This document shows, piece after piece, positions 16,031-25,279 of a stretch of DNA of 64,000 nt. Source of the stretch: Asterias rubens (taxonomy: Eukaryota); assembly GCF_902459465.1 (NCBI RefSeq), contig NC_047069.1, positions 1,550,001 through 1,614,000 of the forward strand. Direction: 5' to 3'. Below the pieces are notes generated by a model. The model made no database searches. It was not told the DNA's origin and was given only the letters and a program-made list of their open reading frames with translations. The translations under genes and the position numbers were made by a program. Numbering within the stretch: the first letter of the stretch is position 1; every line of letters begins with the position of its first letter.

Positions 16031-17943
16031 CTAATAAAAATCGAACATAATTTCGCGACCATCGGAGTCGTAGCCATCCGCTTCGGAAGCTACCAGCCAT
16101 TCCTGTTCGCGTTCCTGTTCGCGTTCCTCCCATCTGGCTTGTGCCTCCATGCTCTTTTTAACTCTCTTGCACACAACACATTTCTGTGTGCGTAATCGCA
16201 GTTGATTTTTGCTGAAATCTGAGCGCTGGAAGTCCCGAAGACAACCGACGCACTCCTTGTTACGATGGGGAAAAACTAAGCTACCCTTTGCCGGAATAAC
16301 ATACATTGGTAAATACTTATTTGTTTCAAACTCGTCGAAATACCTTCTGAATCGCGCTCGCTGAAAATCCAGGTATACTTTGGACGCAATGCGCAGGCGC
16401 TGCATTCCCTGCCCGTCAAGACCATCTTTCAGTTGACGGAACAGCTGGAAAAACCCTCTGACGTCACAGGCTGCATACTGTAACAGTACGTCTTTCAGGG
16501 GGCGGGCCAGCCAAACGCCGTCTGCGGACATCATGTATTTTCCTGCCTCCTTCTTCGCGATGAGGGTTTCATCTTTGACGTATCTCTTGAGACAGTATAA
16601 GAAGCTTCCAAGATTAGGAATCTCATATCTTTCTGGGTATTCTGGATCTGGGTGTTCTTCCTTATGAATAATCTACGTGTACAAATTGAGGAGAAAATTA
16701 AATTTAAAAAATCACGCCTATACACCAAACCATGCACATGCGGCCGTATTATTATTACACCATAAAATTTTATACAGCACTAACCGATTTAAACATTTCC
16801 CGATCTCTGGGTAGGGGTGGCAATAGGGGGCGTACTGAGCATTGGGAAAGCTTCCCCTATAACTGTGAATAACATGCAAACTATACCTCCATAAGTTGCA
16901 GATCCAATACATTGGCCAGCCTGACACCAAACTGATGCCACAGACAGTCCGAGTCCTGGCGACAGTCGAACATGATCTTGTCTCGAGAAGAGTCCTCCAA
17001 GATACTCTTCAAACCCTTATCAAAAACATCTCTACCCAATTTCTTGATGTCGAATAGATAGATGTCGTCATCTGTTGCTATGGAGACGATCGAAAGCTCT
17101 CCTTTGCGACTCAGAGACTCTCCTTCAAGATCGACTGCAAGAAATGGACTGGTATCCTGACTCCGAAGGATTTCATCAAGGGCTGTTTTTATCTGGGAGT
17201 GTTTGTCGATAAGTTGATATTCAAGATGAGGTGTGTTACTGCATAAAGAGTGGGTAAAATTGAGCCTATTTATTTCATGGCAGCGCCACATCCAAGCTTC
17301 GACTCTTTCTCCAAGAAACATACCACTGGCACTTTTTTTGCTAATATAGTCGCCGTAAAACGCAATACAATTTACTGGCGAAGGGTTTATTATTATGTAT
17401 CAAACATCTGGATCAAATTTATAGACTTGCCCAGTCCCTCCGATTGAGCCTCCAAAAACTGTCGTTGTGCGCGCACCCTCTACCGGTGACTATGATGCGA
17501 CCAACAGCGTATACAATCAAGGCTACATGCACCACTAAAATTAGACTTTGTTTCAAGTCTGCGATCGTGGTTCAACCCGGTAGCTAAAACATTATTTGTC
17601 TGAAATAGCGCACTCTTGTTATATTAACCTCCGTATAATAACCGCGACCTCAGACTTGAAATCAAGTCTACACTAACATTAATTTAGAGCAAACTTAACA
17701 CAGAACGGTAACAGGTTTTTGTCTTCAAGGCAAAATACAACACAAATTTGGCTTAAATGGCCCTATTCACATTTTTCTTGGAAGATTCCTGGACGATTTG
17801 AAAAAGCTTTCATTCAAAATACAACGCCTCTATTTGTTCTGACTATCAACAACACATTCTTCAGATTTATATTAATTGTAAACTTACGATGGCTTGTTGC
17901 TAACACGACTTCTCACCGCGTCTTGTGAAGAAGCTGTGGCCAT
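16031..17943 (-). CDS. Egalitarian/EXD1-like DEDDy 3'-5' exonuclease with C-terminal CxxC-CxxC zinc ribbon, copy 1 (349 aa, 3 exons)
   Basis: Exons 17943-17888 (MATASSQDAVRSRVSNKP, phase 2, GTAAGT donor), 17238-16887 and 16672-16031. All introns are GT-AG and in phase. ExoI AVDLEG, ExoII FDCRQDSDCL, ExoIII YAACDV. C-terminal CVGC..FSKNQL..CVVC. Confidence 0.9.
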
Positions 17944-18128
17944 TTTAGACGGTCGTCTCAAAGGATTTTAACAGCTTTAAAGAAAAACATGGTTTCTTTT
18001 AAATTTTGGTTTGACACAGGGACAGATATCACAAAGTAGCACGTATCATTTCACATTGATTTGCTCATAGCAATAGACATGTGTGCAAATAAACCTACTA
18101 AATATGCATACGGTAAAACTACGGTTAA

Positions 18129-21852: not shown

Positions 21853-24800
21853 CTAAACTAACCCCCTTGGCAGCTGCGGCATCGCGAGCCTGCTGGCAAA
21901 AGAGCCAATACGCATGTGCGTCCATTTTCTGTTAATGCACACAGCACATTTCTGTGTACCATTTCGCAGATGATATCTTTTGAAATCTGATCGCGGGAAA
22001 TCCCGTTTGCAACTGAAACATTGCGTGTCGCAAAAGGGCAACCGTAAGCTACCCTTAGCCGGAATTACGTACATCGGTAAATACCGATTGCTTTCGTACT
22101 CATCGTAACTCCTTGTCTTACGCTCTCGCTTTAAGTCCAGGTACACTTTGGACGCAATGCGCAGGCGCTTCATGTCATGGGGGCCAAGACCATCTTCCAG
22201 TTGACTGTACAGCTGGAAAAACCCTCTGACGTCACAAGCTGAATACTGTAACAGTACTTCCTTCATGGGGCGGATCATCCAAATACCGGCTTCCAACATG
22301 ATGTCTTTGCCTGCCTCCTTTGCGTCGATGAGGGCGTCATCATGGACGTATCTCTTGAGACAGTATAAAAAGCCTCCAACGCGAGGAATTTTATCTTTTT
22401 GGGGGTACTCTGGATCTGGGTGTTCTTCATTATGAATAATCTATGTTTACAAATTGAGGAGACAAAAATTGGTTTCAAGTGTTATCCTAACACGCCAACC
22501 CATGATGAACATGCGGCCGTAAGAAGTAGAATGAAACTGGAATTACATACTTATTTGGATACTATACTAAGGAATGAATCTGTATTTTGGGGGTTTATAC
22601 TCTATCTATTATTTCCAATCATTCAAATAAAATGATGATCATTCAAATAAAATGATGAACTGGGGGCTGACCCGGGTGAGCCCCGTCAAAGCTATTCGAA
22701 CGTACCGGGGCAGACCAGGGTCGACCCAGGGAAGCTAAACGAACGCACCCACTATAATACGGTGCTTAAGCAGCTCAATGCAAACGCTTGACATGCTCCA
22801 TAAGGCCTAGCCTACGAGCAGCCCAAATATGTGGTAAGCAGAGCCGTGAAGTTGATAGACTTGATTCAAGTCCCAATCCCGTTAGAGTCCTTTTATTTGT
22901 ATAGTCCCATCGCGTAACCCGTGCCGCGCCACTCCGAACCACAATATCTACAATTTAACGGTGAGGGCGCACCGTTATACGGTTGCTAGTTGGCGCGATA
23001 ATTTTGCTCATGGACCTCTCAAACGAGACTTGAATCAAGTCTATGATGTTGGGCTCTAATTTCGCGCGTGTGTTTACTTCCATTATTTTTGTAGGCCTAT
23101 AATTTATCAAGCCTACAGACGCACTTGAATAACTAATCGCTTTTCACATTTTCTCGATCTCTTTTGGTTGGGGTTGGGGATATGGGGGGGGGGGGGGGCA
23201 AGTGGACAGAGTAGGGAAGCTTCATGACAGATATGAATAACCATAGAATGACAAAATACCTCCATAAGTTGCAGATCCAATACATTGGCCAGCCTGACAC
23301 GAAACTGATGCCATAGACAGTCCGCGTCCTGGCGACAGTCGAACATGATCTTGTCTCGAGACGAGTCCTCCAAGATACTCTTCAAACCCTTATCAAAAAC
23401 CTCTCTACCCAATTTCTTGATGTCGAATAAATAGATGTCGTCATCTGTTGCTATGGAGACGATCGAAAGCTCTCCTTTGCGACTCAGAGATTCTCCTTCA
23501 AGATCGACTGCAAGAAATGGACTGGTATCCTGACTTCGACGGATTTCATCGAGGACTGGCTTTATCTGGGAGTGTTTGTCGATGAGTTGATATTCAAGAT
23601 GCGGTATGTCACTGTGTTATAAAGAGTTGTTAAAATTGATCTAGTTTGTTGGAAAAGACGAAATAAGCATTTATTTCTTGTATTATTCATCACTATGACA
23701 TTGCCACATCCAAACTCTGAATCGTTCTCGCATATTTTTATTTTATTTTAAAGAAATCACGTATAAGAATAAGTCTCGATTGGCGACGTTTATTTGTCAT
23801 CGGAGTAACCGATATCGCACCACGAATTACTGGAGAAGATCTGTATCACACAAACATCTGGACGAAATTCATAGACTTGCCCAGTCCCACCGAGTCAGTC
23901 TCCAAAAACAGTCGACGTTGTGTAAACATGAAAAGTCATGTTTTGTAAACACACAAATGTCCCGCAGGACACAACTCGTTCAAATGATCTGTGGTCCACA
24001 AAATAGGAGGGGTGAATGAAGGCAGTGGGTATATTGAGGGGTGGGATGGGGAAGTATTGGGGAAGAGGGTGGGGAGGGTGAAGAGGTGCACGGAAGGGCA
24101 AGGATGGGTGGGGGAAGATGCAGCATCGGAGGAGGGGTTGGGAAGAGGTTTAGGTGGGTATGGGGAGGGTAGGGGTGGGTCAGTGGGGTTATGGAGGGGA
24201 GGGGGTTAAGTGTTGACTGAGGGGGTCCCATACATGAAAGTGACAACACACCAAGTTTGGAGATAATAGTCCAAGTACTTCTTCATTGCGGAAACAATAT
24301 TTTTCTTGGGAATCCCAAGACCAATCCAATAATATGACAAGCACAAGTAATCACTCGACAACCTTTCTATTGGAACACTAATCCTTTTAAAACACCAAAA
24401 CACCCAAACAAACCAATCAACATCAGGTCGGTTTCATTTCTGTAATACATATTCAAACAGAACCAGCGATGACCTTATAAACGAACGAACCAAAAAAACA
24501 CAAAAACTCTTGTAAAGAATTCGTAAATTTTGCATGAGAAAGCAGGTACGAGTCAAAGTCATTCGGGCATAAATAAACCCATTCAACCACAGCACAAACT
24601 ATGTTAATATTTTAGATTTTGGGTTTTCTACATCCGTCACATCCCTAGCCAGGGCAGACTGTACTCACAACATTATAGAAATATACATTTTTCTTAAAGA
24701 TCAGACTGTATTGTCACTTGCTAGACTGTCAGAGTGTATAAAACTTGACGTTATTTAAAGGGAGGGTACACGTTTGGTAACCACTCAAAACAAATATTAA

Positions 24801-25279
24801 CTTAAAAACTGACTTGGTAACAAGCATTGGAGAGCTGTTGGTAGTATAAAACATTGTGAAAAACGGCTCCCTCTGAAGTAGCATAGAGTTTGAGAAAGAG
24901 GTTATTTCTCACTAAAATAATAAAACACTTCTAGCTATAAGTCTTTTATTCGTATCTGAAAGCACACAAATTCGTCCAACAAGGGTGTTTTTTTCTCATC
25001 ATTTTCTCGCAACTTCGATGACCAATTTAGCTCAAATTTTCACAGGCTTGTTATTTTATGCTTATGTTGGGATTCACCAAGTGAGAAAACTGGTCTTTGA
25101 CAATTATCAAACGTGTACCTTCCCTTTAAACATTAACAGCTTTACAAAATGAAACCCATTTTGTTTCTGGTTACACAAATCCAGTTATCTAGTTAATAAT
25201 TACATTAACTGTAAACTTACGATGGCGTGTTGCCTTCACGACGTCTCACCGCGTCTTTTGATGAAGGAGCTGCGGCCAT
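21853..25279 (-). CDS. Egalitarian/EXD1-like DEDDy exonuclease with zinc ribbon, copy 2 (332 aa as assembled, 3 exons)
   Basis: Exons 25279-25221 (MAAAPSSKDAVRRREGNTP, phase 2), 23611-23260 and 22440-21853, with the same intron positions and phases as copy 1. Exon 2 differs from copy 1 at 8 of 117 aa. AVDLEG, FDCRQDADCL, YSACDV; CFSC..CAVC. The tail appears frameshifted (see findings). Confidence 0.88.
24759..25125. mobile_element. Kolobok-like MITE, AGGGAAGGTACACG subfamily, in intron 1 of exonuclease copy 2
   Basis: TTAA-AGGGAGGGTACACGTTTG ... CAAACGTGTACCTTCCCT-TTAA. Confidence 0.87.

What the first reader, a model, noticed from the sequence alone, without database searches (positions are those of the whole stretch)
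16031..25279. Tandem pair of catalytically intact Egl/EXD1-like DEDDy nucleases fused to an Stc1-like zinc ribbon
Seen: two 3-exon paralogues with identical intron positions. All DEDDy residues are present (D-L-E in ExoI, D in FDCRQD, Y..D in YAACD/YSACD). Each has a C-terminal CxxC-x8-(FSKNQL or FKRYHL)-x6-CxxC module. Established: this nuclease sequence matches the Egalitarian/EXD1 subgroup; animal EXD1 acts in piRNA biogenesis and is reported to be catalytically inactive with an Lsm partner domain. The CxxC..FSKxQL..CxxC pattern is what I recall for the Stc1 zinc-binding domain linking RNAi to chromatin in fission yeast. Inference: an active nuclease plus Stc1-like ribbon (no Lsm or LOTUS domain visible) may be a lineage-expanded small-RNA trimming or anti-transposon/antiviral effector. 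The nuclease exon is 93% identical (8/117 differences) between copies while the ribbon is much more diverged, suggesting specificity divergence.
Basis: partly seen in the sequence, partly recalled or inferred. Interest (0 to 1): 0.7.

Follow-up and report, generated by a model that had tools for sequence, protein, structure and literature searches.

The report
Starfish exonuclease pair with zinc ribbon
Two neighbouring, expressed starfish genes encode apparently active RNA/DNA-end-trimming enzymes that carry a small zinc-binding tail; the pair is real, but it belongs to a widespread, unstudied eukaryotic family and is not a starfish invention.

Summary
Two minus-strand, three-exon genes (A 17943-16031, B 25279-21853) have GT-AG introns at identical positions. 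Both keep the full DEDDy pentad and a C-terminal CxxC-x20-CxxC ribbon. The nuclease exon differs at 8 of 117 residues. Both genes are transcribed and spliced. The genome is Asterias rubens or a near relative, and RefSeq already models these genes as "EXD1-like".

The nuclease belongs to the Egalitarian/EXD1/T. brucei RNase D group. It fails EXD1's defining features: it has no Lsm domain and its catalytic residues are present.

The ribbon's closest known relative is the second zinc finger of Stc1. This shows in Pfam at 14-22 bits against a cut-off of 24.8, and in Foldseek (rank 1 in PDB, rank 2 in Swiss-Prot models). No single test is significant, and only half of the Stc1 domain is present.

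The fusion is not lineage-specific. It occurs in five A. rubens paralogues, other starfish, bivalves, basidiomycete fungi and a stramenopile.

The contrast between a conserved nuclease exon and a diverged ribbon exon comes mostly from old gene conversion of exon 2. A 7-bp frameshifting deletion in the reference B allele adds to it.

Most likely function: an active 3'-5' exoribonuclease whose basic ribbon holds RNA, as the zinc fingers of T. brucei RNase D do. The scan had already noted the three-gene sister cluster elsewhere in this genome.

The parts
17888..17943 (-). Gene A exon 1 coding part (ATG at 17943; ends after 2 bases of a TCT codon)
   Evidence: Sequence reading and A/B alignment; GT donor; matches the N-terminus of orthologue model P0001
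16887..17238 (-). Gene A exon 2: ExoI and ExoII of the DEDDy nuclease (D55 17130-17132, E57 17124-17126, D114 16953-16955)
   Evidence: Pfam PF01612 at 50.2 bits; an RNA-run contig covers exactly 16887-17238 and another joins it to exon 3; codons checked
16031..16672 (-). Gene A exon 3: ExoIII (Y202 16475-16477, D206 16463-16465), conserved linker helix, zinc ribbon, basic helix, acidic tail, stop codon
16169..16252 (-). Gene A zinc ribbon, from C277 to C304 (CxxC-x20-CxxC)
   Evidence: Four invariant Cys; AF2 pLDDT about 97; Pfam Stc1 13.9-14.2 bits at model positions 50-83
25221..25279 (-). Gene B exon 1 coding part (ATG at 25279)
   Evidence: identical to the N-terminus of RefSeq model P0002
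23260..23611 (-). Gene B exon 2: ExoI and ExoII (D56 23503-23505, E58 23497-23499, D115 23326-23328)
   Evidence: Pfam PF01612
21853..22440 (-). Gene B exon 3: ExoIII (Y203, D207), linker, ribbon, and a frameshifted tail in the reference allele
   Evidence: an RNA-run contig covers 21861-22442
21937..22020 (-). Gene B zinc ribbon, from C278 to C305
   Evidence: Pfam Stc1 13.7 bits at model positions 51-83
21931..21932 (.). Site of a 7-bp deletion in the reference B allele, two codons after the last ribbon Cys. Transcript contigs and reads, and the A. amurensis orthologue, carry 7 extra bases here. Those bases restore a tail homologous to gene A's.
   Evidence: Insertion seen in X1 (45.9 of 45.9 depth) and X18 (20 of 26 reads); translation; A. 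amurensis locus L013
16883..17263 (-). Gene-conversion block in gene A: exon 2 plus about 26 nt of intron 1. It is 94% identical to 23256-23639, against 75-78% identity for exons 1 and 3.
   Evidence: blastn; dS contrast
23256..23639 (-). Gene-conversion block in gene B, the partner of 16883-17263

Best explanation
A and B are tandem paralogues of a widespread eukaryotic family of RNase D-type (DEDDy) 3'-5' exonucleases. The family belongs to the same group as Egalitarian, EXD1 and Trypanosoma brucei RNase D (TbRND).

Each protein consists of:
- a short disordered N-terminus;
- a catalytically complete nuclease core;
- the helical linker shared with Egl and TbRND;
- directly after that linker, one strongly basic four-Cys zinc ribbon that runs into a long basic helix;
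- an acidic, aromatic-rich tail.

Most likely mechanism (inferred, not shown): the enzyme removes nucleotides from single-stranded RNA 3' ends by two-metal catalysis. The ribbon and helix grip the RNA a few nucleotides upstream of the 3' end. The four CCHC knuckles of TbRND and the basic helix-loop-helix of Egl do this job from the same structural position.

Evolution:
- The A/B pair arose in the Asterias lineage before A. rubens and A. amurensis split.
- Exon 2 was later homogenised by gene conversion.
- Exon 3 diverged under weaker constraint.
- The reference B allele carries a 7-bp deletion that replaces the helix and the acidic tail.
For: - Gene structure, splicing and transcription.
- Pfam PF01612 at 54-66 bits.
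- The catalytic pentad maps onto TbRND D80/E82/D145/Y226/D230.
- The pentad is complete in 56 of 71 full-length relatives from animals, fungi and protists, and all four Cys are present in 65 of 71.
- The AF2 model has pLDDT 91 and pTM 0.86, with a confident ribbon.
- VIA-align gives Z 24.8 to Egl (model 22-270) and Z 24.6 to TbRND (model 23-267 against chain 52-294).
- In TbRND the zinc-finger domain starts at residue 296, and it binds nucleotides 5-9 counted from the 3' end.
- In Egl the linker and the following basic domain bind RNA.
- Ribbon plus 12 residues has a median net charge of +5 and is positive in 96% of 129 relatives. The tail has a median net charge of -5.
- One relative (P0010) carries six ribbons in tandem after the nuclease, as expected for a modular nucleic-acid binder.
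- Orthologue omega is 0.05-0.10 for exon 2 and 0.23-0.44 for exon 3, which indicates purifying selection.
- The tree and the A. amurensis locus date the duplication.
Against: - No activity, substrate or metal content was measured.
- Egl keeps all five DEDDy residues, yet mutating them does not affect its known function. Intact residues therefore do not prove that catalysis matters.
- RNA rather than DNA as substrate is inferred only from the nearest relatives.
- The ribbon's closest known relative, Stc1, uses its fingers for protein binding (Ago1), not RNA binding.
- Some bivalve relatives have lost catalytic residues.
Confidence: 0.55

Rival explanations
1. One reading: the ribbon is a protein-docking finger like that of Stc1. 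It tethers an active nuclease to an Argonaute or PIWI protein, making a small-RNA 3' trimmer or an anti-transposon/antiviral effector.
For: - Stc1 is the top or near-top match by three routes: Pfam PF12898 at 13.7-21.8 bits per ribbon, always on model positions 50-83; Foldseek PDB rank 1, entry 2LUY; AFDB Swiss-Prot rank 2, Stc1 residues 91-128, rmsd 1.9 A over 38 residues.
- The Stc1 finger domain is needed for Ago1 association.
- The nearest relative EXD1 works in piRNA biogenesis.
- Independent gene expansions in starfish and bivalves fit an arms-race gene.
Against: - Every Stc1 match is below significance (E 0.74 to 2; below the 24.8-bit cut-off).
- Only one of Stc1's two zinc sites is present.
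- The ribbon profile does not find Stc1 among its best 60 PDB sequence matches.
- The family also occurs in basidiomycetes and a stramenopile, which have no piRNA pathway.
- No Lsm, Tudor or PIWI-related neighbour or domain was found.
- No interaction data exist.
Confidence: 0.2
2. A non-catalytic RNA adaptor. Like Egl and EXD1, the nuclease fold serves only to bind RNA, the ribbon adds affinity, and the retained DEDDy residues are dispensable.
For: - The two closest characterised animal relatives both act as RNA binders.
- Egl keeps its DEDDy residues without needing them.
- A few bivalve family members have lost catalytic residues.
Against: - The pentad is complete in 79% of full-length relatives across kingdoms.
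- Exon 2 is under strong purifying selection, with omega 0.05-0.10.
- EXD1, the proven non-enzyme, lost these residues.
Confidence: 0.15
3. A DNA 3'-5' exonuclease acting in repair or on foreign or transposon DNA, like the WRN exonuclease or EXD2. The ribbon would bind DNA.
For: - The DEDDy fold serves both DNA and RNA enzymes.
- WRN, EXD2 and Klenow all appear among the fold matches.
- Basic zinc ribbons bind DNA in many proteins.
Against: Sequence similarity to WRN (E 0.02) and EXD2 (E 0.2) is far weaker than to the RNA-handling EXD1, Egl and TbRND (1e-15 to 1e-18).
Confidence: 0.1

Closest known systems
Trypanosoma brucei RNase D (TbRND; PDB 7C42-7C4C)
   Same: - It is an active DEDDy nuclease core with the same linker (Z 24.6, rmsd 2.8 A over 227 residues).
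- A zinc-binding module starts directly after that linker.
- All catalytic residues are conserved.
   Different: - TbRND has four CCHC knuckles. These proteins have one four-Cys ribbon plus a helix and an acidic tail.
- TbRND is a mitochondrial guide-RNA trimmer of kinetoplastids.
- Sequence identity is only about 24%.
EXD1 (mouse; Bombyx, PDB 5FIQ)
   Same: - It is the best sequence match in PDB (E 2e-18).
- It is the source of the RefSeq name 'piRNA biogenesis protein EXD1-like'.
   Different: - EXD1 has an N-terminal Lsm domain that binds TDRD12.
- It lacks the DEDD residues and is inactive.
- It dimerises through a C-terminal helical hook.
- A and B have no Lsm domain, keep the full pentad and end in a zinc ribbon.
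Drosophila Egalitarian
   Same: - It gives the best fold match (Z 24.8), including the RNA-binding linker helix.
- Its DEDDy residues are retained.
- A basic module follows the linker.
   Different: - Egl is about 1000 aa, with a BicD-binding N-terminus, a helix-loop-helix EHD in place of a zinc ribbon, and a dynein light chain motif.
- Its role is mRNA localisation.
Stc1 domain (Pfam PF12898; S. pombe Stc1, PDB 2LUY)
   Same: The ribbon is most like the second zinc finger of the Stc1 tandem finger, by profile and by fold.
   Different: - Only four Cys and one zinc site are present, not eight Cys.
- Scores are below the family cut-off.
- S. pombe Stc1 carries no nuclease; here the ribbon follows a nuclease core.
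- Stc1's finger binds Ago1. No partner is known here.

Membership tests
DEDDy / RNase D-like 3'-5' exonuclease (PF01612) | Profile score above the curated cut-off | tested here: met
   P0001 (the A. amurensis orthologue of A) scores 65.7 bits and P0002 (B) scores 54.3 bits, against a cut-off of 23.6.
DEDDy / RNase D-like 3'-5' exonuclease (PF01612) | Four acidic residues plus the motif III tyrosine | tested here: met
   A has D55, E57, D114, Y202 and D206. B has D56, E58, D115, Y203 and D207. They align with the TbRND catalytic residues.
DEDDy / RNase D-like 3'-5' exonuclease (PF01612) | Metal-dependent 3'-5' exonuclease activity | not testable with these tools
   This needs an enzyme assay.
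EXD1 (piRNA biogenesis factor) | N-terminal Lsm domain that binds TDRD12 | tested here: not met
   Only 19-20 disordered residues precede the nuclease (pLDDT below 50), and Pfam finds no such domain.
EXD1 (piRNA biogenesis factor) | Loss of the DEDD catalytic residues (inactive nuclease) | tested here: not met
   The residues are present. Bombyx EXD1 has SGDG where A has DLEG, and CRKL where A has CRQD.
EXD1 (piRNA biogenesis factor) | Homodimer through a C-terminal helical hook | tested here: inconclusive
   The homodimer prediction gave no verdict. The C-terminus here is a zinc ribbon plus one long helix.
Egalitarian | BicD-binding N-terminal region, EHD domain and dynein light chain motif in a protein of about 1000 aa | tested here: not met
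   The proteins are 332-349 aa. The nuclease and linker align with Egl residues 524-757 only.
Stc1 domain (PF12898) | Profile score above the curated cut-off of 24.8 bits | tested here: not met
   A scores 13.9-14.2 bits, B 13.7 and the C22 paralogue 15.5. Single ribbons of relatives score 17-22 bits. Only a six-ribbon relative sums to 51 bits.
Stc1 domain (PF12898) | Tandem (LIM-like) zinc finger with two zinc sites | tested here: not met
   There are four invariant Cys only. All matches cover model positions 49-83 of 84.
Stc1 domain (PF12898) | Fold of the second Stc1 finger | tested here: inconclusive
   2LUY ranks 1 of 350,542 chains, but with E 0.74 and probability 0.47. S. pombe Stc1 residues 91-128 rank 2, with rmsd 1.9 A over 38 residues and E 2. 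The best VIA-align Z is only 3.6, to ZAD domains.
Stc1 domain (PF12898) | Binding to Argonaute | not testable with these tools
   This needs an interaction assay.
TbRND-type nuclease with zinc-finger extension | Zinc module placed directly after the Exo-linker unit | tested here: met
   The model aligns to TbRND up to residue 267 (chain residue 294). The ribbon starts at about residue 271-277, and the TbRND finger domain starts at 296.
TbRND-type nuclease with zinc-finger extension | CCHC knuckles | tested here: not met
   The module here is CxxC-x20-CxxC with no His ligand.

The most novel reading that the evidence does not exclude
This conserved family is an uncharacterised class of active Egl/EXD1-group exonucleases. 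In this reading its half-Stc1 finger docks onto an Argonaute or PIWI protein, giving a dedicated small-RNA 3'-end trimmer or degrader. It would be expanded independently in starfish and bivalves and would be ancestral to the inactive EXD1.
Probability: 0.12. Interest if true: 0.75.

Novelty: new variant of a known kind. Interest (0 to 1): 0.42.

Why it matters
The two genes themselves are ordinary annotated loci. They do, however, expose a large and apparently unstudied family: at least 351 clusters at 50% identity across animals, fungi and protists.

The family combines a catalytically complete relative of EXD1 and Egalitarian with a conserved basic zinc ribbon and an acidic tail. The current name, 'piRNA biogenesis protein EXD1-like', is misleading because the defining features of EXD1 are absent.

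Together with TbRND (CCHC knuckles) and Egl (basic helices), the family shows a recurring design. Different positively charged modules are attached at the same point of one nuclease scaffold.

An enzyme assay and a partner search would show two things: whether this is the active ancestor-like form of the EXD1/Egl group, and whether the Stc1-like finger binds RNA or an Argonaute.

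Tried and rejected
- Searching the starfish genome with the Stc1 profile gave two sub-threshold places. One is the C22 paralogue. The other (L001) has no Cys pairs and is a chance match.
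- A word-based search with a near-consensus ribbon found only close Mytilus relatives and no Stc1-annotated protein.
- The ESM Atlas search with the ribbon gave no usable hit.
- The ribbon profile against PDB sequences gave C2H2 half-matches and the SIRT3 zinc module (22.9 bits, E 5e-4), but not Stc1. No sirtuin appeared in the fold searches, so I treat the SIRT3 match as motif-level convergence.
- A single-sequence PDB match of the tail to 4RHO (E 0.03) does not align the Cys residues and was dropped.
- The homodimer prediction for the A orthologue gave no verdict. It counts neither for nor against dimerisation.
- A search for a canonical EXD1 gene in this genome with the PF01612 profile found only the five paralogues, a multi-exon locus on C19, an EXD2-like locus on C17 and a weak C10 hit. 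This crude exon-by-exon search cannot show that EXD1 is absent.
- I considered whether the genes are transposon cargo and rejected it. Synteny with A. amurensis (Sel1-repeat gene, B, A, two GPCR genes) is conserved.
- No paper in the searched library links Stc1 with an exonuclease domain.

Full report
**What is there**

The region holds two genes on the minus strand. I read the exons from the sequence and checked every boundary.

- Gene A: exon 1 CDS 17943-17888, exon 2 17238-16887, exon 3 16672-16031. This gives 349 aa.
- Gene B: exon 1 CDS 25279-25221, exon 2 23611-23260, exon 3 22440-21853. This gives 332 aa.
- All four introns are GT-AG.
- In both genes intron 1 splits a TCT codon after its second base, and intron 2 follows the residues LQLME.

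The spliced B protein is letter for letter the RefSeq model 'piRNA biogenesis protein EXD1-like [Asterias rubens]' (P0002). A is 92% identical in exon 3 to the A. amurensis model P0001. The window is therefore Asterias rubens or a very near relative. It lies at contig C8, 1.55-1.61 Mb, of a 417.6-Mb assembly.

There are 8 differences in the 117 codons of exon 2 and 64% identity over 168 aa of exon 3.

**Expression**

- In one run (X2) a 2252-nt contig runs from 16672 straight to 16887, so intron 2 of A is removed exactly as modelled.
- In another study (X1) one contig covers exactly exon 2 of A (16887-17238) and another covers its exon 3 up to about its 5' boundary.
- A 606-nt X1 contig covers B exon 3 from 21861 to 22442. 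It carries 17 further letters beyond the acceptor, as expected for a spliced message.
- Raw RNA-seq reads of a related species (X18) are enriched on the exons of both genes.

The tissues are not known to me.

**The nuclease**

- Pfam PF01612 scores 54-66 bits on the full proteins.
- Against PDB sequences the best matches are Bombyx EXD1 (2e-18), T. brucei RNase D (TbRND, 2e-15) and Egalitarian (2.5e-15). WRN (0.02) and EXD2 (0.2) are far behind.
- The AF2 model of the A orthologue is confident (pLDDT 91, pTM 0.86).
- It superimposes on Egl with Z 24.8 over model residues 22-270 and on TbRND with Z 24.6 over residues 23-267. The EXD1 match is Z 20.6 and covers only residues 23-222.
- The alignment to TbRND places A's D114 (in CRQD) on catalytic D145, Y202 on Y226 and D206 on D230. 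D55 and E57 form the ExoI pair.
- Bombyx EXD1 has SGDG and CRKL at the ExoI and ExoII positions. This agrees with the published loss of its DEDD residues.

The claim that these are catalytically intact Egl/EXD1-subgroup nucleases therefore holds at the sequence level.

The name EXD1 does not fit. EXD1 is defined by an N-terminal Lsm domain that binds TDRD12, by the absence of the catalytic residues and by a C-terminal dimerisation hook. A and B have 19-20 disordered residues before the nuclease, the full pentad and a zinc ribbon at the end.

**The ribbon**

The four Cys, F284 and the D-F pair are invariant in all five A. rubens paralogues, although exon 3 falls to 36% identity among them.

Pfam scores (cut-off 24.8 bits):

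| Query | Stc1 (PF12898) result |
|---|---|
| A | 13.9-14.2 bits; best or near-best weak match |
| B | 13.7 bits; best or near-best weak match |
| C22 paralogue | 15.5 bits; best or near-best weak match |
| Single ribbons of relatives | 17-22 bits |
| Relative with six tandem ribbons (P0010) | 51 bits, by summation |

The A, B and paralogue matches always fall on model positions 49-83 of 84. Among 32 relatives, 16 hit Stc1 at E below 0.1.

Fold evidence comes from a ribbon-only AF2 model (pLDDT 91.6).

- Its first Foldseek match in the PDB is the Stc1 tandem finger, 2LUY, at E 0.74 and probability 0.47.
- In Swiss-Prot models, S. pombe SPBP8B7.28c ranks second with the highest probability in the list. 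From my own knowledge this is Stc1. The match covers residues 91-128 with rmsd 1.9 A over 38 residues, at E 2.
- VIA-align finds nothing above Z 3.6.
- The ribbon profile does not list Stc1 among its best 60 PDB sequence matches. It picks up C2H2 half-sites and the SIRT3 zinc module instead.

My reading is that Stc1's second finger is the closest known relative, found by routes that are only partly independent. Homology is not established, and the module is at most half an Stc1 domain.

**How common the fusion is**

A profile of exon 3 searched against 1.84 billion representatives found 351 proteins at E below 0.001 and 90 below 1e-10. Nearly all of the best 152 show the same layout: the ExoIII motif YAAxD, a CxxC about 70 residues later and a second CxxC about 95 residues later. 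Forty-two match the strict consensus CxxCxRxFPRxEFSxxQL..QKCRVC.

Named members come from:
- the starfish A. amurensis, Patiria miniata and Acanthaster planci;
- the bivalves Argopecten, Mytilus and Mya;
- the basidiomycete fungi Hebeloma and Grifola;
- the stramenopile Chrysophaeum.

They are annotated 'EXD1-like', 'EXD1', 'EGL', '3'-5' exonuclease domain-containing' or 'uncharacterized'. Of 71 full-length representatives, 56 keep the whole pentad and 65 keep all four Cys. A few bivalve copies have lost catalytic residues.

**Paralogues and history**

A. rubens has five copies: A and B here, and three on C22 at 9.20-9.215 Mb. All have the same intron after LQLME. An earlier first-stage note of this scan (s1-150500) had flagged that C22 cluster, and my search confirms it.

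A maximum-likelihood tree gives the following.
- There is an animal clade with support 98/98 and a starfish clade with support 95/94.
- The A/B duplication lies inside the Asterias lineage but predates the A. rubens / A. amurensis split.
- The C22 group is sister to Patiria and Acanthaster copies.
- There is a very recent duplicate on C22 and a separate expansion in Mya.

The A. amurensis locus has the same order: Sel1-repeat gene, B, A, then two rhodopsin-type GPCR genes. These are therefore stable host genes.

**Why exon 2 looks so conserved**

| Comparison | Exon 2 dS | Exon 3 dS |
|---|---|---|
| Orthologues (A. rubens vs A. amurensis) | 0.071 | 0.075-0.083 |
| Paralogues A vs B | 0.13-0.20 | 0.38-0.45 |

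The neutral rate is therefore even along the gene, yet exon 2 of A and B shares a much younger common ancestor than exon 3. The high-identity block (94%) covers exon 2 plus about 26 nt of intron 1, while exons 1 and 3 are 75-78% identical. The simplest account is an old gene conversion, which predates the species split because orthologues are closer than paralogues.

Constraint differs as well. Orthologue omega is 0.05-0.10 for exon 2, against 0.44 (A) and 0.23 (B) for exon 3. It is mostly a matter of history, not of specificity divergence.

**A frameshift in the reference B allele**

Transcript contigs of the same species label (X1, all depth), 20 of 26 reads of the related species (X18) and the A. 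amurensis genome all carry 7 extra bases between 21931 and 21932. With them, B ends in a tail that is homologous to A's: a basic helix followed by an acidic ...LDSDSN end. Without them, the 30 residues after the ribbon are out of frame. The RefSeq model of 332 aa reflects the deleted allele. I could not tell whether this is a polymorphism or an assembly error, because my one read-laying run was used.

**Mechanism**

The shared part of the fold ends at the linker in three relatives: model residue 267-270, TbRND residue 294 and Egl residue 757. After it, each carries a different positively charged module.

- TbRND has four CCHC knuckles that hold nucleotides 5-9 counted from the 3' end of the RNA in the active site.
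- Egl has basic linker residues and a basic helix-loop-helix that hold the RNA stem.
- This family has a four-Cys ribbon running into a long helix. Its net charge is +7 or +8 in A and B. The median is +5, and the charge is positive in 96% of 129 relatives. An acidic, aromatic-rich tail follows, with median charge -5.

One relative strings six ribbons in a row, which is typical of nucleic-acid binders. From this I infer an active 3'-5' exoribonuclease whose ribbon and helix hold the substrate. The role of the acidic tail is open; it could be autoinhibitory or a partner-binding motif.

The steps that are shown are the gene structure, expression, fold, residue conservation, module position and charge. 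The steps that are inferred are catalysis, the choice of RNA as substrate and the role of the ribbon. The main caveat is Egl, which keeps its catalytic residues without needing them for its known role.

**Verdict**

The pair is not a lineage-specific invention and is already in RefSeq. It belongs to a broad, uncharacterised and misleadingly named family whose closest solved functional analogue is TbRND. The ribbon's closest known relative is half of the Stc1 finger. Interest is moderate.

Noticed in passing
window 21931-21932: The reference B allele lacks 7 bases that are present in transcript contigs and reads and in A. amurensis. The deletion shifts the frame two codons after the last ribbon Cys and removes the conserved basic helix and acidic tail. 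The 332-aa RefSeq model carries the shifted tail.
   Followed up: partly
window 18125-18879 (related copies at 24954-25129, 25678-26048 and 26803-26951): A repeated element lies between gene A's exon 1 and gene B. It has enormous depth in every run laid (millions in contig word depth, over 10,000 in raw RNA reads) and many internal joints. It is probably a very abundant transcribed interspersed repeat.
   Followed up: no
window 17401-17464 and 23851-23914: A 64-nt block inside intron 1 is 87.5% identical between A and B, while the surrounding intron is not alignable. It may be a conserved intronic or regulatory element, or the edge of an older conversion tract.
   Followed up: no
window 7405-8541 and 12775-13884 (+): Two intronless rhodopsin-family GPCR genes (Pfam 7tm_1 at 98 and 55 bits) lie downstream of gene A on the opposite strand. 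A. amurensis has the same arrangement.
   Followed up: partly
window 41528-42097 (-): An open frame matches Histone PARylation factor 1 (HPF1, 78 bits). It is presumably an exon of the starfish HPF1 gene.
   Followed up: no
P0010 (metagenome-derived relative, 701 aa): This family member has six zinc ribbons in tandem after the nuclease. It is the only one found to exceed Pfam's Stc1 cut-off, and it does so by summation.
   Followed up: partly
P0005, P0022, P0041 (bivalve or unnamed relatives): Some family members have replaced catalytic residues (NKDYD, DKSHD, GEPFT in place of DEDYD) but keep all four ribbon Cys. This suggests repeated evolution of pseudo-nucleases within the family, parallel to EXD1.
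   Followed up: no
G000 C22 9,200,000-9,215,000 (L005-L007): Three further paralogues lie here, two of them nearly identical recent duplicates on the + strand and one on the - strand. Two have a shorter ribbon spacer (CxxC-x16-CxxC) that no longer hits the Stc1 profile.
   Followed up: partly
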